This document shows, piece by piece, positions 5,101 through 31,600 of a stretch of 64,000 nucleotides of DNA. The position numbers were made by a program, and so were the translations under genes. Position 1 is the stretch's first letter, and each line of letters begins with the position of its first letter. Origin of the DNA: Macrostomum lignano (Eukaryota); contig NIVC01003194.1 in the NCBI GenBank assembly GCA_002269645.1, positions 78,634 through 142,633 of the forward strand, given 5' to 3'. Below the pieces are notes generated by a model. That model did no database searches. It saw only the letters and a list, made by a program, of their open reading frames with translations, and was not told the origin of the DNA.

Positions 5101-8100
5101 TCCATGGCTGACATGACTTGATAGTCCATGGCTGACATGACTTGATAGTCCATGGCTGACATGATTTGATAGTCCATGGCTGAGATGATTTGATAGTCCA
5201 TGGCTGACATGATTTGATAGTCCATGGCTGACATGATTTGATAGTCCATGGCTGACATGACTTGATAGTCCATGGCTGAGATGATTTGATAGTCCATGGC
5301 TGACATGATTCGATAGTCCATGGCTGACATGATTTGATAGTCCATGGCTGACATGATTTGATAGTCCATGGCTGAGATGATTTGATAGTCCATGGCTGAC
5401 ATGATTTGATAGTCCATGGCTGACATGATTTGATAGTCCATGGCTGACATGACTTGATAGTCCATGGCTGAGATGACTTGATAGTCCATGGCTGAGATGA
5501 CTTGATAGTCCATGGCTGACATGATTTGATAGTCCATGACTGACAAGATTTGATAGTCCATGGCTGAGATGACTTGATAGTCCATGGCTGAGATGATTTG
5601 ATAGTCCATGACTGACAAGATTTGATAGTCCATGGCTTAGATGACCCTAACCGACCCTCCCAGGTGTTGCGCAACGCTCATGAGAGTCTGTGCCGACGTG
5701 CCCGCGAGTCCGCCTCATCAGCCGCGGGGCAGTCAGCCATGCCAGACGGTGGCCCAGCCGCCTCCTCCGTGATGATGCCGCCAACGCCGCAGTCGCCGCC
5801 ACCACCACCACCGAGGCCGCCACCACCGGCCGGGTCAGAGCATCATCAGCAGCATCAGCAGCATCAAAATCAAGTAAACAAGCACCATCAGTCTCCGTCT
5901 CGAAGTCAGGAGCCGCTGAAGTCGCGTCCTCAGCAGCAGCAGCAGGCGCCGCAGTCGCCAAGAATCGTGGACGGCAGCGTGGACTCGGGTCCCGGAGACC
6001 TGGACCTGGACGGCTGCCTGCACTGGGAGGTGGCGCGGCTGCAGCGGCTGCTGGACCGGCTGGAAAGTCGGACAGCTCTGGTCACCGGGCGGACACGAAT
6101 TGAGGAGGCTGTGCTGGATGAGGATGAAGCCATGGTGAGGCCCAGAAACGAGGTGTACATACAGGCTGCTCATACAGGGTGTAGTCGTTGTAGAGTCAGA
6201 CCGCTGATCTTCTACGTACTTTGGTCTTTGACCAATGTATCGAGAAAGGCGTACAGGTGTAACGTGAGAAGCAGCAGGTGCTGGGGGCGATCTGCTGCAT
6301 CATCCCCCAGTCTGCTCAAATCGATCGAGTCTGCTGAAGCAGCGGCTCACATCCTTTGAGCCAATACAGGGGACATGAGGGAAATATTTCCCAATCATCT
6401 ATTTCCCATTTATTCCCCTGCAACCTGTGCGGGGCACAGTGCCGGGTCACAGACACGGGTATTTAATAATCATATATGCGACATCAAAGCTGCAGAGTGG
6501 ATTTGCAGCAGGGAGTGCAGGGTGGCTGCTGGCAAAGCGCCCGGACTGCAATGGAAAACATTGGGGATCGTAGGTGATGGGGGGTGCAGAAAAGTGCGCC
6601 TCTTGAACCTCCATTGCGCGCGCGCTCTCCCTCTGTCCCTCTCTCTCTGCATCTAGCTGGGTTGGAAAATTCTAACCCAGCGTTGCCTCAGTCTCCCTTG
6701 TGCATTTTCACTGGTGTGACTGTGCTTGTGTGTGTGAGTTCAGCTAGCATGAGCAGTGCATGCGGGGCCGCAAGCAGAGAACTCAGCTCAGAGAAAATTG
6801 AGGAATAAATCTCCCATGAGGCTGGTTAGGGGGAGCATGGGGATTTGAGATTGTGCTGAAAGAAGTATGTGACGCCTCAGTGAATGGTTTCCCTTCTTCT
6901 GCAGTAATCCCGTTAGCTCAAATGGCTCAAGCTCAAAAAGGTTCTCTCCTACATGTTTTAGATAGCCGAATAGCAAATGGGAATTAAGTCAGTCAGTCAG
7001 TCAGTCAGTCAGTCAGTCAGTCAGTCAGTCAGTCAGTCAGTCAGTCAGTCAGTCAGTCAGTCAGTCAGTCAGTCAGTCAGTCAGTCAGTCAGTCAGTCAG
7101 TCAGTCAGTCAGTCAGTCAGTCAGTCAGTCAGTCAGTCAGTCAGTCAGTCAGTCAGTCAGTCAGTCAGTCAGTCAGTCAGTCAGTCAGTCAGTCAGTCAG
7201 TCAGTCAGTCAGTCAGTCAGTCAGTCAGTCAGTCAGTCAGTCAGTCAGTCAGTCAGTCAGTCAGTCAGTCAGTCAGTCAGTCAGTCAGTCAGTCAGTCAG
7301 TCAGTCAGTCAGTCAGTCAGTCAGTCAGTCAGTCAGTCAGTCAGTCAGTCAGTCAGTCAGTCAGTCAGTCAGTCAGTCAGTCAGTCAGTCAGTCAGTCAG
7401 TCAGTCAGTCAGTCAGTCAGTCAGTCAGTCAGTCAGTCAGTCAGTCAGTCAGTCAGTCAGTCAGTCAGTCAGTCAGTCAGTCAGTCAGTCAGTCAGTCAG
7501 TCAGTCAGTCAGTCAGTCAGTCAGTCAGTCAGTCAGTCAGTCAGTCAGTCAGTCAGTCAGTCAGTCAGTCAGTCAGTCAGTCAGTCAGTCAGTCAGTCAG
7601 TCAGTCAGTCAGTCAGTCAGTCAGTCAGTCAGTCAGTCAGTCAGTCAGTCAGTCAGTCAGTCAGTCAGTCAGTCAGTCAGTCAGTCAGTCAGTCAGTCAG
7701 TCAGTCAGTCAGTCAGTCAGTCAGTCAGTCAGTCAGTCAGTCAGTCAGTCAGTCAGTCAGTCAGTCAGTCAGTCAGTCAGTCAGTCAGTCAGTCAGTCAG
7801 TCAGTCAGTCAGTCAGTCAGTCAGTCAGTCAGTCAGTCAGTCAGTCAGTCAGTCAGTCAGTCAGTCAGTCAGTCAGTCAGTCAGTCAGTCAGTCAGTCAG
7901 TCAGTCAGTCAGTCAGTCAGTCAGTCAGTCAGTCAGTCAGTCAGTCAGTCAGTCAGTCAGTCAGTCAGTCAGTCAGTCAGTCAGTCAGTCAGTCAGTCAG
8001 TCAGTCAGTCAGTCAGTCAGTCAGTCAGTCAGTCAGTCAGTCAGTCAGTCAGTCAGTCAGTCAGTCAGTCAGTCAGTCAGTCAGTCAGTCAGTCAGTCAG

Positions 8101-11100
8101 TCAGTCAGTCAGTCAGTCAGTCAGTCAGTCAGTCAGTCAGTCAGTCAGTCAGTCAGTCAGTCAGTCAGTCAGTCAGTCAGTCAGTCAGTCAGTCAGTCAG
8201 TCAGTCAGTCAGTCAGTCAGTCAGTCAGTCAGTCAGTCAGTCAGTCAGTCAGTCAGTCAGTCAGTCAGTCAGTCAGTCAGTCAGTCAGTCAGTCAGTCAG
8301 TCAGTCAGTCAGTCAGTCAGTCAGTCAGTCAGTCAGTCAGTCAGTCAGTCAGTCAGTCAGTCAGTCAGTCAGTCAGTCAGTCAGTCAGTCAGTCAGTCAG
8401 TCAGTCAGTCAGTCAGTCAGTCAGTCAGTCAGTCAGTCAGTCAGTCAGTCAGTCAGTCAGTCAGTCAGTCAGTCAGTCAGTCAGTCAGTCAGTCAGTCAG
8501 TCAGTCAGTCAGTCAGTCAGTCAGTCAGTCAGTCAGTCAGTCAGTCAGTCAGTCAGTCAGTCAGTCAGTCAGTCAGTCAGTCAGTCAGTCAGTCAGTCAG
8601 TCAACTCTCTAGCGTGTCCTCTCCCTCATCACACCCCCTGACTTCATTCGCTTTTGAGCCCAGAAGAAAATTGGACTGCCGCTACACTAATTAGCGCCAG
8701 AGGAGAGGCATGCAGCCAGCATGGATTCCTACCGCCAGCTTTGAGCATTTCGGCTTTTTTCTCAACTCGTCGAGTCGATGATGAGGGAGCGCGTTAGACA
8801 GAACTCTAAGTGTAGCTGGGAAGGGACTTTTAGGGGACTAATGATGGGGGACTTTAGAGCATACACAGTCGCTAGTTTTGCAAGCGATAATGCATGGTCA
8901 AAGAGGAACTTTTCAACCACAGCAGGCGTACACGTGTACGCCTTTCCACATCTCAGAGGGCAGAGCACATTTGCAAATCATTCAATTCACTTTCTTCTCA
9001 CTTAACCTGCTGTAAAAGTTACAGCTGCATTTCCGCGCACTTGTCCTCACCTCAGCCTCCCCCCCCCCTTTCATCGCAGATCCTCATCGTGCGCCGCCGG
9101 CTGGCAGTCCAGGAAGAGCAGCTGGCCTCATTTCTGTCCGCCGTGAGGAAGTACTCGAGCCAGCTTGAAGGTGTCACATCCTGCCTCTTGTAAGTCGCGC
9201 GTGTGGACGCTTCGTTTGACCTGCCATGCCCGCATGTGCATGTATCTGTGTTCTCATCTCCGTGTTCTCCCTCCTCCTTCATCTGCCAGCTCTCATTCTC
9301 TCTTCCCCTAATCCCCTTCATCCGGGTTGTCGATACAATTGAACAAGAAAAACAAGAGCCTATCTGCTACATGTAGCTTGTAATTTTTGTGTCGGGGGGC
9401 TTTTTTGGAGGGTAGAGGGGGTAGGAAGGGAGAGAGCGGAGACGAATCTTGAGCTTAAGATGAGCACTGCAATTTCTACTGCATGCATGTATTCACCGGG
9501 GTTGAAATGTGAGTCAGTTGATTAATGCAGACAAGTCCTGTGCCGTATTGTGCTTACATGTATGCATGCTTTGACAGAAGGGACACATTAGGTACTAAAT
9601 ATTAGAGTTGCCTTTAAGGTGTACATTACGTACTTCAGTAGATAAAGGTTTTAGAAGCGAGTTTTCGGTGGGCTATGAGGTAGATAGCTTGAGTTTGCAG
9701 TGGAGTGTGAGGTAGATAGCTTGAGTTTGCAGTGGAGTGTGAGGTAGATAGCTTGAGTTTGCAGTGGAGTGTGAGGTAGATAGCTTGAGTTTTCAGTGGA
9801 GTGTGAGGTAGATAGCTTGAGTTTGCAGTGGAGTGTGAGGTAGATAGCTTGAGTTTTCAGTGGAGTGTGAGGTAGATAGCTTGAGTTTGCAGTGGAGTGT
9901 GAGGTAGATAGCTTGAGTTTGCAGTGGAGTGTGAGGTAGATAGCTTGAGTTTGCAGTGGAGTGTGAGGTAGATAGCTTGAGTTTGCAGTGGAGTGTGAGG
10001 TAAATAGCTTGAGTTTGCAGTGGAGTGTGAGGTAAATAGCTTGAGTTTGCAGTGGAGTGTGAGGTAGATAGCTTGAGTTTGCAGTGGAGTGTGAGGTAGA
10101 TAGCTTGAGTTTGCAGTGGAGTGTGAGGTAGATAGCTTGAGTTTGCAGTGGAGTGTGAGGTAGATAGCTGGAGTTTGCAGTGGAGTGTGAGGTAGATAGC
10201 TTGAGTTTGCAGTGAGTTGTGAGGTAGATAGCTTGAGTTTGCAGTGAATTGTGGGGTAGATAAATGAGTTTGCAGTGGGTTTAGGGAGATGGTTCTTGTA
10301 TTAGGAGTGAGCTATGCAGAAGCAAATTAACCAGGGGCTTATAGCAGATACGGCCTAACAATGCCAGATGATATCGCACAGCATCAACCCCCCCCCCAGC
10401 ATGATGTATTGATTACTATCCCTGGGCAAAGCTCGCATGCGGAGCAGTTGGGATTAATATACAATCCTGTCAGGATCCTTTATGAAATTTAGAACATACT
10501 GGCACCAAATCTCCCACGTGAACAATAGAAAATCGCAATTACTCATTGACGCGTGCAAAAACATACATTTTATGTATGGCTTTGATGAAGCTTAAGTTAA
10601 CTGGGTTCTGCATGACAGAGTTTTCATGCATCTTAGGCAGTTATAAGGTGTATCCCCAATCGCTATATAACCTGGATAAACAACATTAGCTATAAGTCAG
10701 GTTGGCAGTAGCTAGTCCTGCGCCAGATAACAGGGGCCAACATATTCATATATGCTCGGACTCTTCAAGACCAGAGTCTCTGGCTAAGCTCTCAGCTTCT
10801 GTATTATTCATAGTCTTTTTCTTTGACTTAGCCCTGATGAGGTCGCAGAGAGCCTCCTTGTCTCTGTCAACAGCCGCCCCTGGAGCCAGAAGTTTATTTG
10901 AGTAATTGCCTCAGCCAGGAGGCTCCATTGCTCTCTGTGAAAGAGAAACTTGAAATACAGTAGCCCTATAGCAAACAAAAATAGCACCTAGCCCTGGCAA
11001 TTATCCATTTGAAGCAATAAATACAGCAAATGTAAATACCCATAGCAACCATAAAATAGCCCTAGCAATCATAAATAGCCCTAGCAACCATAAATATCCC

Positions 11101-14913: not shown

Positions 14914-16293
14914 TCAATCAATCAATCTATCAACAAACAGATCAATCCATCGATCAATCTCACTGTCGCACTCTCCGCCGCTATTATCCAACTCCGAGTC
15001 CCACCGCTCCCAGGAGTCCAGTGCGCACTCGGACTCCGCATCGTCAACCCCGGGAACGAAGGCCCAGCCGCGCCGGGTTCGAGTCTCGTCTGAGGCCCGC
15101 AGGCGGAGCAGGTGAACCCGGCCTGGGTAGGCGGACTGGAGTGACAGATCAGGGAGACTGAGGTCATCCTTCACAAGCTCCAATTATCACTTTAGTAAAG
15201 AAAATGACTTATAGCAATCAAAATATCCTTAGAAACTAGGAATTATCCTAACAACTGGGAATAACCCTAGCAACCAGGAATAGCCCTAGCAACCCCTTAA
15301 TATCCCTAGCAAACCGGAAATACACTAGCAACCGGGAGTAACCCTAGCAACTGGGAATAACCTTAGCAACCGGGAATAACCTTAGCAACCGGGAATAACC
15401 TTAGCAACCGAAAATAACCTTAGCAACCGTGAATAACACAGCAACCGGGAATGACGCTAGCAGTCGGGAATAACCCTAACAAACAATAATAACCCTAGCA
15501 ACAGGAAATAACCTTAGCATAACCTTAGCAACCGAGCATGACCCTAGCAAACGGGTATAACCCTAACATCCGTAAATAGCCATAGCAACCGGGAATAACC
15601 CCAAAAAACCGTGAATAGCCATAGAAACCGGGAATGACCCTAGCAACCGGGAATAGCCATAGAAACCGGGAATGACCCTAGCAACCGGGAATAGTCATAG
15701 AAACCGGGAATGACCGTAGCAACCGGGAATAGCCATAGAAAAACCGGGAATGACCCTAGCAACCGGGAATAGCCATAGCAACCGGGAATAACCCTAGCAA
15801 CCGGGTATAACATTAGCTACAAAGAAAAGAATCGCTACTTTGGAATAAAGCAAATCCTTATCAAACCCTAGAAACCGTAGACACACTCAAAAACAGTCAG
15901 TCAGGACAATACCCTCACCAGAAAGTATTGGATATCGGTAGGCCTGCGTACATCTGACACCACCCAGAGCCCGTCAGGAGGCGGTTGCGCCATCTGCACC
16001 GCCAGCCGGCAGAAGCAGCCAGGATCGGCAGCTCGCAGCCGCTCACCCCAGGCGATCATGTCAGCCCTGAAGGCCTCCTTGTACTCTGTGGAATCCGCCA
16101 GTCGGTCTGCATCGAGTTGGTGCAGCCTGGCGTACTCCGCCTTCAGCGGCTGGCTGACCCGAACGCAAGCGGCTGGAAAGTTGCGCTCAGCCGCGGCGGC
16201 TAATATTCGAGAGGTCACGTGATCTTTACCGGATTTGCGCTTGCCGGAGATCAGCAGCAGCTGGCGAGGCTTGAGACTGCAGTTTGAGGCCGA
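14914..16293 (-). CDS. PMVK: Phosphomevalonate kinase (animal type), 2 exons; no genomic in-frame ATG at the N-terminus
   Basis: Exons 16293-15919 and 15135-14914 (GT-AG, phase 0). Motifs LLISGKRKSGKD, LKAEYA, YKEAFRADMIAWGE, VVSDVRRPTD and RGWAFVPGVDDAESECALD. The frame begins right after the acceptor ctttcatctcaactgcAG (16294-16295). Confidence 0.92.
15235..15815. repeat. Minisatellite, about 19 bp unit (ccctagcaaccgggaataa)
   Basis: Fills the PMVK intron. Confidence 0.9.
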
Positions 16294-16315
16294 CTGCAGT
16301 TGAGATGAAAGCGGT
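16294..16315 (-). promoter_or_regulatory. Candidate trans-splice acceptor of PMVK
   Basis: Pyrimidine-rich tract plus CAG immediately 5' of TCG GCC TCA; phase 0 with the PMVK frame. Confidence 0.6.
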
Positions 16316-16429
16316 GGGGCGAATCCAGTTAATATCCTGTACGCACACTGGGACTTGGAATTGGCATTTGGCGCTGATGCTTAACCTTCTTGAGGATGAT
16401 ATATGTATGAGGGAATAAAAGATTAAGGG

Positions 16430-19780: not shown

Positions 19781-21724
19781 TCAGTCTGTCCCGCCGGTGT
19801 CCAAGCAGCCCCGCGCGCTCCACACCATCTTGACGCACTCTTCGGCGTCGTTAAACCACCGATGCGGCCGTCTGACACGACGCTGCAGCAGGCGGATTAG
19901 CGACAACAGTCGGGCCTCGAAACGCGAGTTCAGCTCGTTAGCTAAGAGTGGCGCGGAAGTGGAGAATGAGGACACGAACTCGGCTACAACCCCGACAGTT
20001 GATTCCACCTCTGCTTTGATTGCTGGATCGACAACAAAATTGGCAACATCGTATAAATTGTTTTTATCGGCACCCTCGACTTCGCTCTTATCGTCCTTAG
20101 CAATCGCATCAATCCATCTAGGCTGCAACGCCAACAAGCCATCATACAGTGGCCAATCATTCTCGCAAGCAACACAGTCGCAGTCGAACAAATACTGAGC
20201 TGCAAGACTTTCTTGACGCTGCTGTTTCGGATGCACAGCCCAATGCAAACCGTAGTTGTCAAGGAGCTCCTCGCCTTTAGCAATCGGTCGGAGAGCTCGA
20301 ATCTCCAGTCTCAAACCGGGACAAGTGACTCGCGATACATTCGGATCGCAAGAATGATTAATTAAACTAGCCGTTGGATACACAGCCGACCCAATGTCTC
20401 TGATAGTCAGTGCAGAAATATCCACTGAGCTGCCATTGTCAGTACTACTACTAGTAGTCAGCCTACTCGGCGGAGTGGACAATGCAGTTACATCGTGAGC
20501 ATTGCACGGCACCAGCATCAGATGGCGCAGCAGTGCTGCAACAAGTGGGGCGGCTACATCTAGCTGAGAATTTGCCTCAGACTCAACACTGAGCAGCAGA
20601 GCCATCTGGCAGGCAACGGCGACTCGCTGAGCCAAATCGCGACTCTCTCGCTGTCGTTCTCCAGCTACCAAAGCCAGCACCGATTGATAATCGCCAGCAG
20701 ATCCGAATACCGATTCGAAATCTTTGAAATTCTTTGCCTTAGCAACAGCTTGAGCAACGGAAACCGGACCGCCAGCAGCGATCACGGTGGCGAAAGCGAG
20801 CCGACCAATGCTCGCATTGAATGCGGAGTCCAACCAGCCAGCCAGCCAGCCGCATTCCACCCTGTGGACCGGGTCGTTATCCCGACAATTCTCCGAGCAG
20901 AAGCCAACAACTGAGCAGTCGCTACAGGGCAGCAACCGTTGGCAAGGTGCCAAGCAGGCTGAGCAGTGACTATCGCGAAGATTTGACAGCAGAATGGCGC
21001 TAAAAGCCGGCTCAGAGACCAACAGGTCTCCAACATCGACGTCTTCAAGAGTAAGAAGACAGCGACCGCGACTTTCGTCTGCCAGAGCGAGCTGCACCTT
21101 GGCGCTGGCGTGCGGCAGCTGTTGATTAAAATCCCGCAACAACGATTGAGATGCTGCTGCTGGCTGGGAAACACTTGAGGATTTCGACACTGACATTCTC
21201 TTCTGACAGTCAGCGATGCGACCTGTCAGCTTACCGGCCCGCTCGTCGCCATACGGCAACCGTAGAGCCGCTTCAGCATCGGCTATGGCTTCCGCATAGC
21301 AACCGAGACGTTTGAACACCAGCGAACGGTTGGCGAAAGCCACGGCAAGATCCGAGCTACCTGGCTGGGCGTGCCGGATGCATTCAGAAAATCGCAGCGC
21401 CGCTAAACGCAGCAGGCCGCAGTCGAGGGCTTCCAGACCGGCCGAACGAGCTTCCGCTAGGCGAGCTGGACTCTTGGCGTCGCTAGGCAACGGACGCTGA
21501 TGCTTTGTCCAGACGGTGGCACTTCTGGCAGCATAGTTAGACCAATCAATCGAGGCAAGCACTCGTTCGGCAAGGCGAAGTTCGAATTCCATGGATGCCG
21601 TGGAATCGTTGAGAATATTGGTTGCTTCGTTTGAGCCTAGCCAGTCAAGAGCTGCGGCTGCGGCTTTAGTACCGAGCGACTTCATGGACTGCAGCATGCT
21701 GCTGCTCTTGACTGGGGATGCCAT
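19781..21724 (-). CDS. SMYD4: SET and MYND domain lysine methyltransferase with N-terminal TPR (SMYD4-like), intronless, 647 aa
   Basis: TPR segment AVAFANRSLVF. MYND finger CSACLAPC-CSDC-FCSENC-HRVEC. SET motifs AVYPTASLINHSCDPN and ELLDNYG. Post-SET YLFDCDCVAC. Confidence 0.88.
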   Translation of the reverse strand: MASPVKSSSMLQSMKSLGTKAAAAALDWLGSNEATNILNDSTASMEFELRLAERVLASIDWSNYAARSATVWTKHQRPLPSDAKSPARLAEARSAGLEALDCGLLRLAALRFSECIRHAQPGSSDLAVAFANRSLVFKRLGCYAEAIADAEAALRLPYGDERAGKLTGRIADCQKRMSVSKSSSVSQPAAASQSLLRDFNQQLPHASAKVQLALADESRGRCLLTLEDVDVGDLLVSEPAFSAILLSNLRDSHCSACLAPCQRLLPCSDCSVVGFCSENCRDNDPVHRVECGWLAGWLDSAFNASIGRLAFATVIAAGGPVSVAQAVAKAKNFKDFESVFGSAGDYQSVLALVAGERQRESRDLAQRVAVACQMALLLSVESEANSQLDVAAPLVAALLRHLMLVPCNAHDVTALSTPPSRLTTSSSTDNGSSVDISALTIRDIGSAVYPTASLINHSCDPNVSRVTCPGLRLEIRALRPIAKGEELLDNYGLHWAVHPKQQRQESLAAQYLFDCDCVACENDWPLYDGLLALQPRWIDAIAKDDKSEVEGADKNNLYDVANFVVDPAIKAEVESTVGVVAEFVSSFSTSAPLLANELNSRFEARLLSLIRLLQRRVRRPHRWFNDAEECVKMVWSARGCLDTGGTD

Positions 21725-24565: not shown

Positions 24566-25936
24566 CTAAGCAAGCTTTGAACGTTTAGTCGCGGTGGCAG
24601 AGTTAGACTCATCTGCGCTCGAATGTTCAAGTTTCTTTTTCATATCGGTGACAACTTCATCTTTGATTTTGATACTTTGATTTGAACTCTCCGACGAGGT
24701 GCGTTGAGCACTTTCCAAAGTGCGCTCTGTACTTTCAGAAATGCGTTCCAAAGTGCGCTCTGTACTTTCCGAAGTACAATGTGCACTTTCCGAAGTGCAT
24801 TTTGAACTTTCCAAAGTGCGTTCTGTACTTTCAGAAATGCGTTCCAAAGTGCGTTCTGTACTTTTCGAAGTACAATGTGCACTTTCCGAAGTGCATTTTG
24901 AACTTTCCAAAGTGCGTTCTGTACTTGGAATCTCGCATTTAGCTTCTTTTTGAGCTTCTCTATCGATTTTTTGATTCTGATCAGACTCGGCGAATCGCCA
25001 TGGAAACCGTTCACTCTTTCGCGTATGCTTAGAAAACAGTCTCAACGGTTGCAGGCGAAGCAACGGCCTCAGCATCTCTTCGGCATCAATGCCGAGCAGT
25101 TCTCTACAGACCAACGCCATGACAAGATCGCAACGAGCATTTATACGCAGATAACTCTGAGCATCTTTCTTTGTAGGCTGCAGATTAATAATGACTAATT
25201 TGCCGCCCATTGTGGGCAGATCGGCGGCCGGAACAATCTGCAAACTGGTGCCCAGAGTCAGATTAACGGTAGCCCGACTGGAATGCTCGCGAGCTCGACG
25301 AAGATCTACCTGAGGCAGCTGATGCTCCCAGTCTAGCACCGTGTCCAGCATCTGGCCGCCGCAGATGCCGTCAACACTGTCACCAGCATCGCCACCGGCT
25401 TTGACGGATTTCTTTCTGCCTCGCCTAGCCGGAGCTCCGCACCGCCTCCCGGTGGCTTTCTGACCGACCGTCTCCACCGGTTGGTCTCTCGCCCGGTGCA
25501 AGCCGCACCGGGCGCACCGCTCAACAAACATATCGCCATGCAAAATCGACAACCGATTGCGAGGAAATCCAGACCGAAGGTGCAAACCGTCAACATTCTG
25601 CGTCACCAGGTAGTGAACGAATCCGGCCGTTTCCAAGGCAACCAGAGCGGCGTGAGTAAGTGTTGGCTGAGCCTCTTCAAACTTGGCCCCGGCTTCAACT
25701 GTTCGACCTTCGCGTTCTAGAGTCCAGACGCCGTTGGGGCCGCGGAAATCCGGGATTCCGGCCGAGGTGCTGACGCCGGCTCCCGTGTGGACAACGACTC
25801 GAGCTCCGGGCTGTCGAATCAGGTCCACCAGCTGACGAGCTTTCAACTCCCAATCGGCTTGGGACTCGTGAGTTTCGGGCAGGCCCAGAGTGCCTTTGTC
25901 CGAGTATTCGGACAGCCCGGCCGAGTAGTTAGCCGA
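24566..25936 (-). CDS. SIRT6: NAD-dependent deacylase sirtuin 6, intronless coding region, about 457 aa including a supplied Met
   Basis: N-terminus SANYSAGLSEYSDKG matches the SIRT6 start (M)SVNYAAGLSPYADKG. Also HTGAGVSTSAGIPDFRGPNGVW, QNVDGLHLRSG, the catalytic His in ILHGDMF, zinc-binding Cys residues and DTVLDWE. The frame begins after the acceptor ccttcctcccacctccAG (25937-25938). Confidence 0.92.
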   Translation of the reverse strand, partial: SANYSAGLSEYSDKGTLGLPETHESQADWELKARQLVDLIRQPGARVVVHTGAGVSTSAGIPDFRGPNGVWTLEREGRTVEAGAKFEEAQPTLTHAALVALETAGFVHYLVTQNVDGLHLRSGFPRNRLSILHGDMFVERCARCGLHRARDQPVETVGQKATGRRCGAPARRGRKKSVKAGGDAGDSVDGICGGQMLDTVLDWEHQLPQVDLRRAREHSSRATVNLTLGTSLQIVPAADLPTMGGKLVIINLQPTKKDAQSYLRINARCDLVMALVCRELLGIDAEEMLRPLLRLQPLRLFSKHTRKSERFPWRFAESDQNQKIDREAQKEAKCEIPSTERTLESSKCTSESAHCTSKSTERTLERISESTERTLESSKCTSESAHCTSESTERTLERISESTERTLESAQRTSSESSNQSIKIKDEVVTDMKKKLEHSSADESNSATATKRSKLA

Positions 25937-25956
25937 CTGGAGGTGGGAGGAAGGAG
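25937..25956 (-). promoter_or_regulatory. Candidate trans-splice acceptor of SIRT6
   Basis: Strong pyrimidine tract plus CAG exactly where the conserved initiator Met would lie. Confidence 0.7.
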
Positions 25957-26039
25957 ATGAACTGTTGGTGTGTTGCCGTACCGACTGTTTTTCTATAACG
26001 TTATGGACCCTAATCATCTCTATTCTCTCTAAAAAATCC

Positions 26040-27475
26040 CTGCCATCTCTAAACCCCCTTAATCTCATTTATCTGTTCTCTCCCCCAATCACAGCCATCT
26101 CTAATCCCCCTCAATCCCATTTATCTCTGTTCTCTCCCCCAATCACAGCCATCTCTAATCCCCCTCAATCCCATTTATCTCTGTTCTCTGCCCCAATCAC
26201 AGCCATCTCTAATCCCCCTCAATCCCATTTATCTCTGTTCTCTCCCCCAACCACAGCCATCTCTAATCCCCCTCAATCTCATATATCTCTGTTCTCTCCC
26301 CCAATCACAGCCATCTCTAATCCCCCTCAATCCCATTTATCTCTGTTCTCTGCCCCAATCACAGCCATCTCTAATCCCCTCAATCCTATTTATCTCTGTT
26401 CTCTCCCCCAATCACAGCCATCTCTAATCTCATTTATCTCTGTTCTCTCCCCAATCACAGCCACCTCTAATCCCCTTTAATCTCATTTATCTCTGTTCTC
26501 TACCCCAACCACAGCCATCTCTAATCCCCTTTAATCTCATTTATCTCTGTTCTCTACCCCAATCACAGCCATCTCTAATCCCCCTCAATCTCATTTATCT
26601 CTGTTCTCTACCCCAACCACAGCCATCTCTAATCCCCTTTAATCTCATTTATCTCTGTTCTCTACCCCAACCACAGCCATCTCTAATCCCCTTTAATCTC
26701 ATTTATCTCTGTTCTCTACCCCAATCACAGCCATCTCTAATCCCCTTTAATCTCATTTATCTCTGTTCTCTACCCCAATCCCAGCCATCTCTAATCCCCT
26801 TTAATCTCATTTATCTCTGTTCTCTACCCCAATCACAGCCATCTCTAATCCCCTTTAATCTCATTTAGCTATGTTCTCTACCCCAATCCCAGCCATCTCT
26901 AATCCCCTTTAATCTCATTTATCTCTGTTCTCTACCCCAACCACAGCCATCTCTAATCCCCTTTAATCTCATTTATCTCTGTTCTCTCCCCCAATCACAG
27001 CCATCTCTAATCTCATTTATCTCTGTTCTCTCCCCCAATCACAGCCACCTCTAATCCCCTTTAATCTCATTTATCTCTGTTCTCTACCCCAATCACAGCC
27101 ATCTCTAATCCCCCTTAATCTCATTTATCTCTGTTCTACCCCAATCCCAGCCATCTCTAATCCCCTTTAATCTCATTTATCTCTGTTCTACCCCAATCCC
27201 AGCCATCTCTAATCCCCTTTAATCTCATTTATCTCTGTTCTACCCCAATCCCAGCCATCTCTAATCCCCTTTAATCTCATTTATCTCTGTTCTACCCCAA
27301 TCCCAGCCATCTCTAATCCCCTTTAATCTCATTTATCTCTGTTCTACCCCAATCCCAGCCATCTCTAATCCCCTTTAATCTTATTTAACTCTGTTCTCTC
27401 CCCCAATCACAGCCATCTCTAATCCCCTTTAATCTTATTTAACTCTGTTCTCTCCCCCAATCACAGCCATCTCTA
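26040..27475. repeat. Minisatellite, about 52-54 bp unit (cagccatctctaatcccctttaatctcatttatctctgttctctaccccaatca)
   Basis: Array between the DGAT1-like gene and SIRT6. Confidence 0.95.
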
Positions 27476-27847: not shown

Positions 27848-30800
27848 TCAAAGATAGTACTGACAGTAGTCAGCATAGCCCAGTCTAGCTAGCACTGGCA
27901 GGCCAAGCACAAGGCAGAGCCAAACGAAGGCATTGTTGCCGAATCTGACGCAGGCGGCATCCAGAATGGGCAGCACGATGGCCACAGTGAGCAGAGGCCA
28001 CGGCTGGGGCGATCGAAGCACTGCGGACACAACCAGCTGGGCCAGGAGAGCCCAGGCTAGACTAGGCAGATTGAATTCCGCTGCGGATGGCCACACAGAC
28101 TTCAGCAGGTTGGTCAGGCTTGAAGCATTCCACCAGAGTCGCTTGGTTTGAGTTAGTTTGCTACTGATAGTAGTGTCCTCAGCTGAGGGTTTCTGCTGCT
28201 GAAAATATTTTTTTGGTGAAAAATGATTTCTTATGTTTCTTTTTGTGGAATTCTTGCGTTACAATGATTGGCATGGAAAGGCATTTCCCAAGCAACTTTT
28301 AAAGACGATTCCTAAATAACTTCAAAGGGCGATTCCTAAATAACTTCAAAGGGTGATTCCTAAAAATCTTAAAAGCTTACACTAAACTTAGAAACGAACA
28401 ATGAAAAGCTAAAAATAAAGAAATAGCACTTACAAAGTCACTGCCAGACTGAAAGCAGCAATCCATCAGTTTCAGAATCCGATCCATTGCCGCTCCTGCA
28501 GCCAAGCAGACGGCAATAACAGGAGGCGACAGGCGCAGTTGCCTCTCAACCATTACCAGCCAGTAGGACGCATTGTACTCGTAGCTATTAGCAGCTGGAT
28601 CAGATGAGGCGGCAGCTAGAGAAGGCATTAACCACTGTTGAGTCAGAGCCACTATAGCAACTAATAGTCCTGCTAGTTGAGCAAAGCTAATTAGTAGCAT
28701 TCTGTTGACACTGACAACCCGAAGTTCAACGAGTTGCCTAGCAATGCGCTGACGCTGCAGGTGCAAATTGGTCAGCTTGAGGAACAGAGCCACACTGATT
28801 GACATTCCTGCGAAGCCGACAACTGTTGAAGCGGGAATAGCGAGACGGAGGGTTATATTACACCTGAGTTTATGGAGTGCATTAACACACCTGGGTTTTA
28901 TATGGGGTACATTAACACACCAGGGTTTTAAGGGTACAGAGAAGTATTTCAAAAAAGCTTTAATAAATCAAGGTATTCAAGGCTGCTCATAACACACTAC
29001 TCAACCCAAGTTTAAAGATAATAGGAAATACTCACTGGGCGAAGGCCTAGACCACAGCACAATGCAAGCGGGAGCCACCAGAAGCAGACAGGCACTGCTG
29101 GCCACTCCGAGCCTCCGATAGCCAGAAGAAGCGGCAAAAGCAGACGCATTCAGAGCGGCAAAAGCAACGCAGACCAGGCCGGCAATGCAGGCTGGACCGC
29201 CTCCAACAGCCAGGCAGCTAAGAGGATTTCCAGCCAGAGGGCCGTATCTTAGATGGGACTCTAACAGACAGCGAGCGATGCACATCGATAGAAGGATTAG
29301 CAATGGGCTTAGTAGGCCTCTGAAAGCGCCTCTGCTTTGGCCTAATTGGCCTGGCCGACTTAGCAGACTGTCTGCTGGACTGTGGATCTGCCGACGCCTG
29401 GAAGCATTTCCAGCAGGGAAGAGATGCGTCAGGTGAACTATTGAGTATGTTGATATTCAATTAATGGGATTTAATTTAAGATTTCATTTAAGGTTGTTTA
29501 AACATGTAAATTAAAAGCAAGCCCAGGTCTTTGGATTTTTTGTACAGATTGTAAAATCGAATTATAATTTTAAGATAAGTAAATGAAATTAGAGCATTAT
29601 CTAAATTAGCCTGTAACCTAGGTCCTAGATTTGATACTTGAGACAGAAGATACCACCTGAGAGAGTAGATACCACCTGAGACAGTAGATACCACCTAAGA
29701 GACTGTAGATACCACCTGAGAGACAGTAGATACCACCTGAGAGACAGTAGATACCACCTGAGAGAGTAGATACCACCTGAGAAACAGTAGATACCACCTG
29801 AGAGACTGTAGATACCACCTGAGAGACAGTAGATACCACCTGAGAGACTGTAGATACCACCTGAGAGACAGTAGATACCACCTGAGACAGTAGATACCAC
29901 CTGAGAGACAGTAGATACCACCTGAGAGACAGTAGATACCAACTGAGACAGTAGATACCACCTGAGACTGTAGATACCACCTGAGAGACTGTAGAGTGTA
30001 GATGCCACCTAAGAGACAGTAGATTCCACCTGAGAGACAGTAGATACCACCTGAGACAGTAGATACCACCTGAGACTGTAGATACCACCTGAGAGACTGT
30101 AGAGTGTAGATGCCACCTAAGAGACAGTAGATACCACCTGAGAGACTGTAGATACCACCTGAGAGACAGTAGATACCACCTGAGAGACAGTAGATACCAC
30201 CTGAGAGACTGTAGATACCACCTGAGAGACAGTAGATACCACCTGAGAGACAGTAGATACCACCTGAGAAACAGTAGATACCACCTGAGAGACAGTAGAT
30301 ACCACCTGAGACTGTAGATACCATCTGAGAGACTGTAGAGTGTAGATGCCACCTAAGAGACAGTAGATACCACCTGAGAGACTGTAGATACCACCTGAGA
30401 GACTGTAGATACCACCTGAAGAGACAGTAGATACCACCTGAGAAACAGTAGATACCACCTGAGAGACAGTAGATACCACCTGAGACTTTAGATACCACCT
30501 GAAAGACTGTAGAGTGTAGATGCCACCTAAGAGACAGTAGATACCACCTGAGAGACTGTAGATACCACCTGAGAGACAGTAGACACCACCTGAGAAACAG
30601 TAGATACCACCTGAGAGACTGTAGAGTGTAGATGCCACCTAAGAGACAGTAGCTACCATCTGAGAGACAGTAGATTATGTAGATACCATCTAAGAGACAG
30701 TAGATGCCACCTAAGAGACAGTAGATACCACCTGAGAGACTGTAGATACCACCTGAGAGACAGTAGATACCACCTGAGAAACAGTAGATACCACCTGAGA

Positions 30801-31600
30801 GACTGTAGAGTGTAGATGCCACCTAAGAGACAGTAGCTACCATCTGAGAGACAGTAGATTATGTAGATACCATCTGAGAGACAGTAGATGCCACCTAAGA
30901 GACAGTAGCTACCATCTGAGAGACAGTAGATTATGTAGCTACCATCTAAGAGACAGTAGCTACCATCTGAGAGACAGTAGCTACCACCTAAGATGAGACA
31001 GTAGATACCTCTGGCACCCTGGTTTTAAATTTGGCATCCTGAATTCGGACACAGGTAACTAGTGATTTGTCCTAGGTTTTAAAAGATGTAATACAGCAAT
31101 GCTGATTGCTGGGTAGGACTTGCTTCATTAGCAACAACAGACTACATTTTAATTAGGCCAACTAACCCATCTTGATCTTCCGGTACGCTTTGCTGCTCCC
31201 AGTCGCATTTCAGCCACGCTAGCAACTGCCTACCAACTATACCAACAGCATTGGCTAGGGCAGACGATTTCACAATCGATTTTGCACGACTCCTCAAATC
31301 GATGTTTAGATAGGACCGACGACTCAAAGTAGACACCGAATCGAACGAATTTGAACGCCTATGACGACGCTTCGGTCGAGAACGTTCAATAACGGTTGAC
31401 GCAGCGGCGCTACTTGATGTAGAATTCGAAGGCTTAGAAGATTTTTCCGGTGTTTTATCAAGGACATTCTTCTTTGGCTGAGCAAGTTTAGTAGAGCTCA
31501 GAAGGCGATAATGCGAAGGCGACGGAGCAACAGCAGTCGATCCTTCATCATTAGCGTGAACCAAAGGCGCCACGGCTATAATACCGCTAGTGAGATGCAT
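27848..31600 (-). CDS. Divergent DGAT1-like MBOAT membrane protein lacking the catalytic His, 4 exons, about 511 aa
   Basis: Exons 31600-31167, 29397-29036, 28822-28434 and 28198-27848; GT-AG with matching phases (1536 nt). Collinear DGAT1-like blocks: HSPADSLLS, FRGLLSPLLILLSMCIARCLLESHLRYG, ALFLKL, LTQQWLMPSL, MVERQLRLSPP, WWNASSLT and GNNAFVWLCLVLGLPV. The start codon is less certain. Confidence 0.72.
29640..31010. repeat. Minisatellite, about 21 bp unit (gagacagtagataccacctga)
   Basis: Fills intron 1 of the DGAT1-like gene. Confidence 0.95.

What the first reader, a model, noticed from the sequence alone, without database searches (positions are those of the whole stretch)
25880..26070. 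The SIRT6 initiator Met is replaced by a splice acceptor at the exact conserved position
The genomic sequence reads ccttcctcccacctccAG|TCG GCT AAC TAC TCG GCC GGG CTG TCC, encoding SANYSAGLSEYSDKG. SIRT6 proteins start MSVNYAAGLSPYADKG, so precisely one ATG is missing at the junction. An SL-donated AUG would restore the canonical N-terminus. The upstream in-frame ATGs (26017, 26068) lie at the edge of or inside the 54-bp minisatellite and would add a non-conserved extension.
Basis: partly seen in the sequence, partly recalled or inferred. Interest (0 to 1): 0.78.

Follow-up and report, generated by a model that had tools for sequence, protein, structure and literature searches.

The report
SIRT6 start codon supplied by trans-splicing
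In the flatworm Macrostomum lignano the SIRT6 gene has no start codon of its own at the conserved position; it almost certainly takes the AUG from the spliced leader added to its mRNA, which has been known in flatworms since 2006, so this is a tidy example and not a discovery.

Summary
On the minus strand, a 23-base tract that is 91% pyrimidine ends in CAG at 25939-25937. It runs straight into TCG GCT AAC TAC..., a single 456-codon exon (25936-24566) encoding an intact SIRT6. Exon residue 1 aligns with residue 2 of human SIRT6, and all 118 homologues carrying the motif have Met immediately before that Ser.

The window is Macrostomum lignano (GCA_002269645.1, contig NIVC01003194.1). Its 35-nt spliced leader ends ...TTGCATG, directly followed by the GTAAG donor. 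The site CTCCAG matches the published trans-splice acceptor motif [T/C]TNCAG. The deposited gene model starts exactly at 25936 with no Met, and that annotation cut transcripts at positions where leader-bearing reads mapped.

A second gene in the window, phosphomevalonate kinase (PMVK), shows the same thing more cleanly: it has no usable genomic ATG at all.

I could not retrieve any leader-bearing read or cDNA for this gene.

The mechanism is established in flatworms (Cheng et al. 2006), and Schistosoma mansoni Sirt7 is a sirtuin precedent. This is a new member of a known kind, and interest is low to moderate.

The parts
25937..25961 (-). 3' splice (trans-splice) acceptor: pyrimidine tract TTCATCTCCTTCCTCCCACCTCC followed by AG. 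The last six bases, CTCCAG, match the M. lignano SL acceptor motif [T/C]TNCAG.
   Evidence: 21 of 23 pyrimidines. The motif is from PMC8629364.
24566..25936 (-). Single coding exon of a SIRT6 orthologue: 456 codons plus TAG, beginning at codon 2 (TCG = Ser2). The catalytic QNVDGLH motif and all four Zn-binding cysteines are present. The first internal in-frame ATG is codon 136 (25531), downstream of the NAD-binding motif and the catalytic His.
   Evidence: P0001, the gene model on record, has exactly these coordinates in three contigs.
25937..26071 (-). Upstream stretch that happens to stay open in frame (44 codons). It holds ATG 26068-26066, an out-of-frame ATG at 26046, ATG 26017-26015, and TAA 26071-26069. 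I read it as the 3' end of the outron, removed by trans-splicing.
   Evidence: It encodes the non-conserved MRLRGFRDGRDFLERIEMIRVHNVIEKQSVRQHTNSSSPSSHLQ. The S/P-rich end of that peptide is simply the pyrimidine tract read as codons.
26035..27475 (-). 54-bp minisatellite (27.3 copies), G-rich on the transcribed strand, with two ATGs per unit. It fills most of the space between the upstream gene and the acceptor and lies within the presumed outron or operon spacer.
   Evidence: (GC skew -0.665 on the + strand).
27848..29372 (-). Upstream same-strand gene (357-aa membrane-protein-like model with no Pfam hit). Its stop is at 27848, and AATAAA signals lie at 27741-27736 and 27720-27715. It is the likely first gene of an operon-like unit with SIRT6.
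   Evidence: The operon criterion (repeat-adjusted spacing under 1 kb, downstream gene trans-spliced) is from PMC8629364.
14914..16299 (-). Second case in the window: the phosphomevalonate kinase (PMVK) gene. Its model starts at TCG 16293, directly after CTGCAG. An in-frame TAA lies 30 codons upstream (16383) with no ATG between, and the next in-frame ATG is codon 79. The Pfam domain begins at residue 15.
   Evidence: The same holds in the diverged copy L005, where the upstream 100 nt are 90% identical and exon 1 is 98.4% identical.
24710..24926 (-). Coding 96-bp tandem repeat (2.3 copies) in the non-conserved C-terminal tail of the SIRT6 protein (STERTLE.../SKCTSESAHCTS...).

Best explanation
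This is the SIRT6 orthologue of the flatworm Macrostomum lignano, encoded by a single exon that begins at codon 2.

Proposed mechanism:
- The primary transcript probably reads through from the upstream same-strand gene, across a 1.4-kb minisatellite.
- It is trans-spliced at the CAG acceptor (25939-25937) to the 35-nt spliced leader.
- The leader's last three bases are AUG, so the mature mRNA reads ...UUAUUGC AUG UCG GCU AAC UAC.
- The leader-derived AUG is the initiator, giving the canonical MSANYSAGLS... N-terminus.
- Trans-splicing also discards an outron carrying dozens of upstream AUGs.

Shown here: the genomic anatomy, the organism, the leader sequence and its donor, the motif match, the exact alignment to residue 2 of SIRT6, and a gene model on record that starts at the acceptor.

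Inferred: that leader-bearing reads map to this site in vivo, that ribosomes start at the leader's AUG on this mRNA, and that the gene forms an operon with its upstream neighbour.
For: 1. Organism. The window is an exact substring of NIVC01003194.1 from GCA_002269645.1. This is the accession prefix and assembly I recall as M. lignano Mlig_3_7, and the flatworm-specific motifs SILHGD and KHT.KSERFPW are shared with Echinococcus SIRT6.

2. Leader. The spliced leader ends in ATG and is followed by a GTAAG donor, according to the literature and to an SL RNA gene I fetched, L012:625-664. Five metatranscriptome contigs carry this leader at their 5' ends.

3. Acceptor. CTCCAG matches [T/C]TNCAG and is preceded by 21 of 23 pyrimidines.

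4. Frame and homology. Residue 1 aligns to residue 2 of human SIRT6, and 118 of 118 homologues have Met directly before the Ser.

5. Gene models. The model on record, P0001, starts exactly at 25936 with Ser in all three copies. The deposited annotation cut transcripts where SL-bearing reads mapped and then ran TransDecoder (PMC5730564). Eight of the ten model starts I inspected lie 0-2 nt after an AG.

6. No cis alternative. There is no ATG|GT donor between 25937 and 27848.

7. No downstream alternative. The first in-frame ATG is codon 136, past the NAD-binding motif and the catalytic His.

8. Second example. PMVK in the same window has no genomic in-frame ATG at all before codon 79.

9. Precedent. 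Cheng et al. 2006 reported the leader AUG in frame in 28% of S. mansoni trans-spliced mRNAs and required by more than 40 cDNAs (as summarised in PMC9851317). SmSirt7 takes its ATG from the leader (PMC3772001). The Macrostomum leader's 'final ATG (translation start codon)' is noted in PMC10468722.
Against: - I saw no leader-bearing read, cDNA or peptide for this gene. Protein searches found no transcript-derived M. lignano SIRT6, and an exact junction 26-mer was absent from JGI metagenome contigs.
- The frame stays open upstream to ATG 26017 and ATG 26068, so an unspliced mRNA could in principle encode a 27- or 44-residue extension.
- The leader AUG has a weak context (U at -3, U at +4). In all five leader-bearing transcripts I retrieved, the main ORF starts at a downstream AUG. 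Use of the leader AUG is therefore gene-specific, not general.
- One neighbouring gene model (SET) does not start behind an AG. Model starts are thus not an infallible proxy for trans-splice sites.
- The three gene copies are identical in the coding sequence, so there is no comparative evidence on the upstream stretch for SIRT6 itself.
Confidence: 0.85

Rival explanations
1. The mRNA is not trans-spliced, or not always. Translation then starts at the genomic ATG at 26017 (or 26068), giving SIRT6 a 27- or 44-residue lineage-specific N-terminal extension.
For: The frame is open from TAA 26071 to the exon and holds two in-frame ATGs. ATG 26017 has a purine at -3.
Against: - The extension is not conserved. 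Its C-terminal part is the pyrimidine tract read as Ser/Pro codons.
- No stop in 44 codons is expected by chance about 12% of the time ((61/64)^44, my calculation), so the open frame says little.
- None of 118 homologues lacks the Met directly before Ser. The few with extensions still have it, which suggests over-extended ORF calls.
- The gene model on record stops at the acceptor instead of extending to these ATGs.
- Any transcript starting further upstream carries two AUGs per 54-bp repeat plus an out-of-frame AUG at 26046.
- PMVK shows that the leader-AUG solution is used in this same locus.
Confidence: 0.08
2. A small upstream exon spliced in cis supplies the 5' UTR and the ATG, ending ...ATG|GT, and joins to the acceptor at 25937.
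For: The acceptor is a normal 3' splice site and cannot by itself tell cis- from trans-splicing. Sharing of acceptors between cis- and trans-splicing is reported in parasitic flatworms (PMC12582326).
Against: - There is no ATGGT anywhere between the acceptor and the upstream gene's stop. The only one within 3.4 kb lies inside the upstream gene's coding sequence at 28553.
- The repeat's ATG|GCTGTG would be a very poor GC donor.
- The gene model on record has no upstream exon.
Confidence: 0.04
3. The missing ATG reflects a dead or dying gene copy, an assembly error, or non-AUG initiation.
For: The gene is intronless in a genome that averages about five introns per gene (PMC5730564). M. lignano also has another locus called SIRT6, Mlig005493, whose qPCR primers do not match this window.
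Against: - The ORF is intact for 456 codons, with the catalytic His, four Zn cysteines and the NAD motif all aligned to human SIRT6 (E = 3.5e-78).
- Three contigs carry the identical sequence.
- ATG to CAG needs two substitutions, which is not a typical long-read indel error.
- A strong splice acceptor at exactly this spot is not expected from decay.
Confidence: 0.03

Closest known systems
Schistosoma mansoni mRNAs that use the spliced leader's 3'-terminal AUG as initiator Met (Cheng, Cohen, Ndegwa and Davis 2006, J Biol Chem 281:733; paper not held, cited through PMC9851317, PMC12582326 and PMC3772001)
   Same: A flatworm spliced leader ending in AUG is joined in frame to an exon that starts at codon 2, and the genome lacks the start codon.
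   Different: The species is different: a free-living, early-branching macrostomorph instead of a trematode. Here nothing has been shown at the RNA or protein level.
SmSirt7 of S. mansoni (Lancelot et al. 2013, PMC3772001)
   Same: A class IV sirtuin whose initiating ATG was shown by RACE to come from the spliced leader.
   Different: It is the paralogue Sirt7, not Sirt6. In that study SmSirt6 was not reported as trans-spliced. Echinococcus SIRT6 has a genomic ATG. The Sirt6 case therefore looks independent, not inherited.
slORFs: open reading frames created by spliced-leader addition (slORFfinder, PMC9851317)
   Same: The start codon comes from the leader and not from the gene.
   Different: slORFs in nematodes, Oikopleura and trypanosomes mostly use near-cognate codons and often create new or altered ORFs. 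Here a true AUG restores a deeply conserved N-terminus.
Downstream genes of M. lignano operons resolved by SL trans-splicing (Ustyantsev and Berezikov 2021, PMC8629364)
   Same: Four same-strand genes lie in a row. The spacer is mostly repeat, the downstream gene has a [T/C]TNCAG acceptor, and the repeat-adjusted spacing is under 1 kb.
   Different: That paper does not discuss the leader AUG as a start codon. Operon membership is inferred here from spacing only.

Membership tests
Flatworm mRNAs initiated at the spliced-leader AUG (Cheng et al. 2006 class) | The organism's SL exon ends in AUG immediately before the GU donor. | tested here: met
   The M. lignano SL is CGGTCTCTTACTGCGAAGACTCAATTTATTGCATG. 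The SL RNA gene L012 shows ...TTGCATG|GTAAGA, a U-rich Sm-like site and a 3' hairpin.
Flatworm mRNAs initiated at the spliced-leader AUG (Cheng et al. 2006 class) | [quoted passage not shown] | tested here: met
   CTCCAG fits [T/C]TNCAG, with 21 of 23 pyrimidines upstream. There is no ATG|GT donor in the 1.9-kb spacer. Other donor types were not scored exhaustively.
Flatworm mRNAs initiated at the spliced-leader AUG (Cheng et al. 2006 class) | The leader AUG is in frame with the main ORF, and no other AUG can give the full-length conserved protein from the spliced mRNA. | tested here: met
   ATG|TCG GCT AAC TAC gives MSANY. The next in-frame ATG is codon 136. Residue 1 aligns to residue 2 of human SIRT6.
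Flatworm mRNAs initiated at the spliced-leader AUG (Cheng et al. 2006 class) | SL-bearing transcripts are joined at this acceptor. | tested here: inconclusive
   The evidence is indirect only. The gene model on record starts exactly at 25936, and the annotation pipeline cut transcripts at SL-read peaks. No SL-junction sequence was found.
Flatworm mRNAs initiated at the spliced-leader AUG (Cheng et al. 2006 class) | Translation actually initiates at the leader AUG. | not testable with these tools
   This needs ribosome profiling, N-terminal proteomics or reporter assays.
SIRT6 (class IV sirtuin) | Sir2 catalytic domain with the catalytic His and a four-Cys zinc module. | tested here: met
   Pfam SIR2, E = 1.1e-20. 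QNVDGLH and all four Cys align to human SIRT6. There is a 15-residue insertion in the Zn module.
SIRT6 (class IV sirtuin) | Closest to SIRT6 rather than SIRT7, with the SIRT6-type N-terminus S-V/A-N-Y-A/S-x-G-L-S. | tested here: met
   All named proteins among the 119 best hits are named SIRT6 or are unnamed 'hypothetical' entries; none is named SIRT7. In the PDB search, SIRT6 scores E = 3.5e-78 and SIRT7 E = 3.5e-42. The N-terminal motif was compared.
M. lignano operon (Ustyantsev and Berezikov 2021 definition) | Adjacent same-strand genes, the downstream one SL trans-spliced, with repeat-adjusted spacing under 1 kb. | tested here: inconclusive
   The genes are on the same strand. The stop-to-acceptor distance is 1911 nt, of which 1441 nt is minisatellite, leaving about 470 nt. 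The trans-splicing status is inferred, and co-transcription has not been shown.

The most novel reading that the evidence does not exclude
SIRT6 and PMVK in M. lignano may depend entirely on trans-splicing for translation, having lost their genomic start codons. The canonical protein would then be made only from leader-bearing mRNA. The efficiency of trans-splicing, or leaky scanning past the weak-context leader AUG, could act as a regulatory valve for a longevity and genome-maintenance gene in a long-lived, regenerating animal. An unspliced form starting at ATG 26017 could add a second, N-terminally extended isoform.
Probability: 0.1. Interest if true: 0.45.

Novelty: new member of a known kind. 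Interest (0 to 1): 0.25.

Why it matters
- Annotation. Gene models in Macrostomum and other flatworms that start at a trans-splice site are deposited as 5'-partial proteins without Met, as this one is. Anyone using them for orthology, expression constructs or N-terminal analysis must add the leader-derived Met. A naive ORF caller would instead pick the spurious upstream ATG (the 500-aa or 483-aa ORF).
- Evolution. SIRT6 has one of the most rigidly conserved N-termini in the family. This case shows that once the leader supplies an AUG, even such a gene can lose its own start codon.
- Scope. None of this changes what is known about the mechanism.

Tried and rejected
- Transcript-derived SIRT6 proteins from M. 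lignano or other Macrostomum species. Two searches of the large protein collection, one with the full ORF and one with the N-terminal 107 aa, returned only the genomic model P0001. No relative above 53% identity to the full ORF turned up.
- The exact SL-exon junction 26-mer in JGI metagenome contigs: no hit.
- The SL sequence in the window itself: absent.
- Supplementary tables of four M. lignano papers and the 2025 MBE paper, searched for a SIRT6 entry with a trans-splicing flag. There was either no entry or the table was truncated. The only SIRT6 entry, qPCR primers for Mlig005493, does not match this locus.
- Comparison of the three genomic copies, to see whether the upstream stretch evolves like coding sequence. 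They are identical in the coding sequence and differ at one base in the 100 nt upstream, so this is uninformative.
- Look-ups of arbitrary long ORFs to obtain more gene models. These failed, and one ORF was only a microsatellite read as protein.
- A Logan transcript, P0015, that shares the SILHGD motif. It has an ordinary genomic-looking 5' UTR and its own ATG, so it gave no information.
- Cheng et al. 2006 is not in the held library. It is cited only through papers that summarise it.
- Rfam found no family for the SL RNA gene in L012.
Full report
**1. What is in the sequence**

The feature lies on the minus strand. Reading 5' to 3', a 54-bp minisatellite (26035-27475, 27.3 copies) is followed by about 100 nt of unique sequence. 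That sequence ends in the pyrimidine-rich tract TTCATCTCCTTCCTCCCACCTCC and then AG (25938-25937). The next base opens TCG GCT AAC TAC TCG GCC GGG CTG TCC.

From 25936 the frame runs for 456 codons to TAG at 24566 without an intron. The codon before TCG is CAG. The frame is also open upstream for 44 codons, back to TAA at 26071, and holds ATGs at 26068 and 26017. An out-of-frame ATG sits at 26046.

**2. What the gene is**

The product has a Sir2 domain (Pfam E = 1.1e-20). Among the best 119 hits in the large protein collection, every named protein is SIRT6, with up to 53% identity. Against PDB sequences it matches human SIRT6 at E = 3.5e-78 and SIRT7 at only 3.5e-42. QNVDGLH and all four zinc cysteines are aligned, and there is a 15-residue insertion in the zinc module.

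Residue 1 of the exon aligns with residue 2 of the human chains. Of the 119 homologues, 118 carry the S-x-N/D-Y motif, and all 118 have Met directly before the Ser. In 111 of them that Met is residue 1. Exactly one codon, the ATG, is therefore missing from the genome, and a splice acceptor occupies its place.

The next in-frame ATG inside the exon is codon 136. It lies beyond the GAGVSTSAGIPDFRG NAD-binding motif and the catalytic histidine, so it cannot serve as the start.

**3. Which organism**

The protein collection holds a gene model, P0001, with exactly this product on three contigs of GCA_002269645.1 (NIVC01000305.1, NIVC01003194.1 and NIVC01005049.1). The 21-kb locus from NIVC01003194.1 is an exact substring of the reverse complement of the window.

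From my own knowledge, this accession is the Mlig_3_7 assembly of the flatworm Macrostomum lignano (Wudarski et al. 2017). The three near-identical copies fit that line's known partial genome duplication (PMC8629364). The motifs SILHGD and KHT.KSERFPW are shared with Echinococcus SIRT6, which independently points to a flatworm.

**4. The spliced leader**

M. lignano has one 35-nt leader, CGGTCTCTTACTGCGAAGACTCAATTTATTGCATG. It is followed in the SL RNA gene by a GTAAG donor, and about 30% of genes are trans-spliced to it. The top motif at trans-splice acceptors is [T/C]TNCAG (PMC8629364).

The leader is not in the window. Scanning JGI metagenome contigs with its last 21 bases returned six contigs:
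- Five carry the leader at their 5' ends, so they are trans-spliced mRNAs.
- One, L012, is an SL RNA gene reading ...CGGTCTCTTACTGCGAAGACTCAATTTATTGCATG|GTAAGACACC..., followed by a U-rich Sm-like site and a terminal hairpin.

The leader exon therefore ends in ATG. Joining it to 25936 gives ...UUGC AUG UCG GCU AAC UAC, which translates as M-S-A-N-Y.

**5. Is this acceptor a trans-splice site?**

- The six bases CTCCAG fit the published motif, and 21 of the 23 preceding bases are pyrimidines.
- The motif occurs at 0.0023 per position in this window, so its ending exactly at the codon 1/2 boundary is not expected by chance.
- The nearest upstream AG (25963-25962) lies before the pyrimidine tract. 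It would put the leader AUG out of frame, with a stop after 11 codons (my reading).
- No ATG|GT donor that could supply the ATG from a cis exon exists between the acceptor and the stop of the upstream gene.
- The gene model on record starts at exactly 25936, with Ser. It extends neither to the open upstream ATGs nor to some arbitrary position.

The deposited annotation was built by cutting transcriptional units at peaks of trimmed SL-bearing reads and then running TransDecoder (PMC5730564). That procedure yields a 5'-partial CDS beginning at the first exon base whenever the leader AUG is the real start.

I inspected ten model starts in the three copies of this neighbourhood. Eight lie 0-2 nt after an AG: the membrane-protein gene in three copies, SIRT6 in three and PMVK in two. 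The two copies of the SET gene are the exception. I take this as good but indirect evidence that SL reads map to 25936.

**6. A second case in the same window**

The phosphomevalonate kinase gene (16293-14914, two exons, 198 aa) has a model that starts at TCG directly after CTGCAG. An in-frame TAA lies 30 codons upstream with no ATG between, and the next in-frame ATG is codon 79. The Pfam P-mevalo_kinase profile starts at residue 15, and the GKRKSGKD P-loop lies at residues 17-24.

No genomic AUG can give a functional protein here, so the leader AUG, or an unseen exon, is required. A diverged second copy (L005) keeps the same acceptor and the same lack of an ATG. Identity jumps from 90% in the 100 nt upstream to 98.4% in exon 1, which marks the acceptor as the true start of constrained sequence. 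This shows the phenomenon is systematic in this genome and not a peculiarity of SIRT6.

**7. Context**

Four genes lie head to tail on the minus strand: the membrane-protein gene, SIRT6, a SET/MYND gene and PMVK. The upstream gene ends at 27848 and has AATAAA signals at 27741-27736 and 27720-27715.

Almost everything between there and the SIRT6 acceptor is minisatellite. The stop-to-acceptor distance is 1911 nt, or about 470 nt after subtracting the repeat. By the published criterion of under 1 kb repeat-adjusted spacing, the pair would count as an operon. This is inference, because co-transcription was not shown.

The repeat carries two ATGs per unit. Any untrimmed 5' leader would therefore be a minefield of upstream AUGs, and removing it by trans-splicing makes functional sense.

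**8. Caveats**

- I could not obtain a single leader-bearing read, cDNA or peptide for this gene.
- In the five leader-bearing transcripts recovered, the leader AUG is never the main start. It opens ORFs of 2, 3, 3, 5 and 41 codons, and the main ORF starts 20-110 nt downstream. The leader AUG also has a weak context (U at -3).
[quoted passage not shown] 2006 as summarised in PMC9851317).
- Four of the five leader AUGs are stopped within five codons. That is more than the roughly 21% expected by chance (my estimate, n = 5) and hints that ribosomes do see this AUG.
- An unspliced isoform starting at ATG 26017 cannot be excluded.

**9. Comparison with what is known**

Use of the flatworm leader's 3'-terminal AUG as initiator Met was described in 2006 and is cited as a general property of flatworm leaders (PMC12582326). 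In S. mansoni, RACE showed that Sirt7 takes its ATG from the leader (PMC3772001).

For Macrostomum, Wiberg et al. [quoted passage not shown]

Echinococcus SIRT6 has its own genomic ATG, with a TTCCAG four bases upstream. Loss of the ATG in M. lignano SIRT6 therefore looks lineage-specific. I found no paper that mentions this particular gene. The 'SIRT6' studied in M. lignano ageing work (Mlig005493; PMC5946080) is a different locus, because its primers do not match the window.

**10. Verdict**

This is a new member of a well-known kind. Its value is mainly for annotation: the deposited protein lacks its Met, and naive ORF calling picks a spurious upstream ATG. Interest is about 0.25.

Noticed in passing
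window 14914-16383 (- strand); L005:17915: The phosphomevalonate kinase gene has no genomic in-frame ATG between an upstream TAA and codon 79, and its model starts right after CTGCAG. This is a cleaner case of a leader-AUG-dependent gene than SIRT6. It is conserved in a diverged second copy.
   Followed up: yes
window 29372-29390 (- strand); L005:5247; L006:6606: Copies of the upstream membrane-protein gene have model starts at two AG acceptors 13 nt apart. The upstream one (ggcag|ATC) puts the leader AUG in frame with the long ORF. The other (tccag|CA) gives a 5-codon mini-ORF, ATG CAG ACA GTC TGC TAA. There is no genomic in-frame ATG before codon 30/35.
   Followed up: partly
window 21721-21724 (- strand): The SET/MYND gene model (646 aa, single exon) begins at GCA immediately after a genomic ATG, with no AG in front (acaaatg|GCATCC). 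It is the only exception among the model starts inspected. It may be an artefact of trimming leader reads through their terminal ATG. Unexplained.
   Followed up: partly
L008-L011, L013 (JGI Ga0316592) and L012:625-735 (JGI Ga0302322): Environmental or metatranscriptome contigs carry a leader identical to M. lignano's, and one contig holds an SL RNA gene. In four of five transcripts the leader AUG is followed by a stop within 2-5 codons. Rfam has no family matching this SL RNA.
   Followed up: partly
window 26035-27475: The 54-bp minisatellite is strongly G-rich on the transcribed strand (GC skew -0.67 on the + strand), with two G4-5 runs per unit. It could form G-quadruplexes in the outron. 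Repeat number and a few bases differ between the three genomic copies.
   Followed up: no
window 24710-24926 and about 25390-25440 (- strand): The SIRT6 protein has a coding 96-bp tandem repeat in its C-terminal tail and a 15-residue insertion (KSVKAGGDAGDSVDG) inside the zinc-binding module, relative to human SIRT6.
   Followed up: no
PMC5946080 supplementary file 6 versus the window: The qPCR primers for the 'SIRT6' reported as up-regulated with age in M. lignano (Mlig005493.g1-g3) do not match this gene at up to 3 mismatches. The species therefore has another locus annotated as SIRT6.
   Followed up: partly
L007:1491-1503 (Echinococcus granulosus SIRT6): The tapeworm orthologue has a genomic ATG with an acceptor-like TTCCAG four bases upstream. 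A 7-nt deletion of that kind of arrangement would produce the M. lignano configuration. This is speculative.
   Followed up: no
window 6977-8641 and 29640-30993: A long perfect 12-bp microsatellite translates as (SVSQ)n and forms a spurious 554-aa ORF. A 21-bp minisatellite (about 49-64 copies) lies upstream of the membrane-protein gene. The window is unusually rich in tandem arrays.
   Followed up: no
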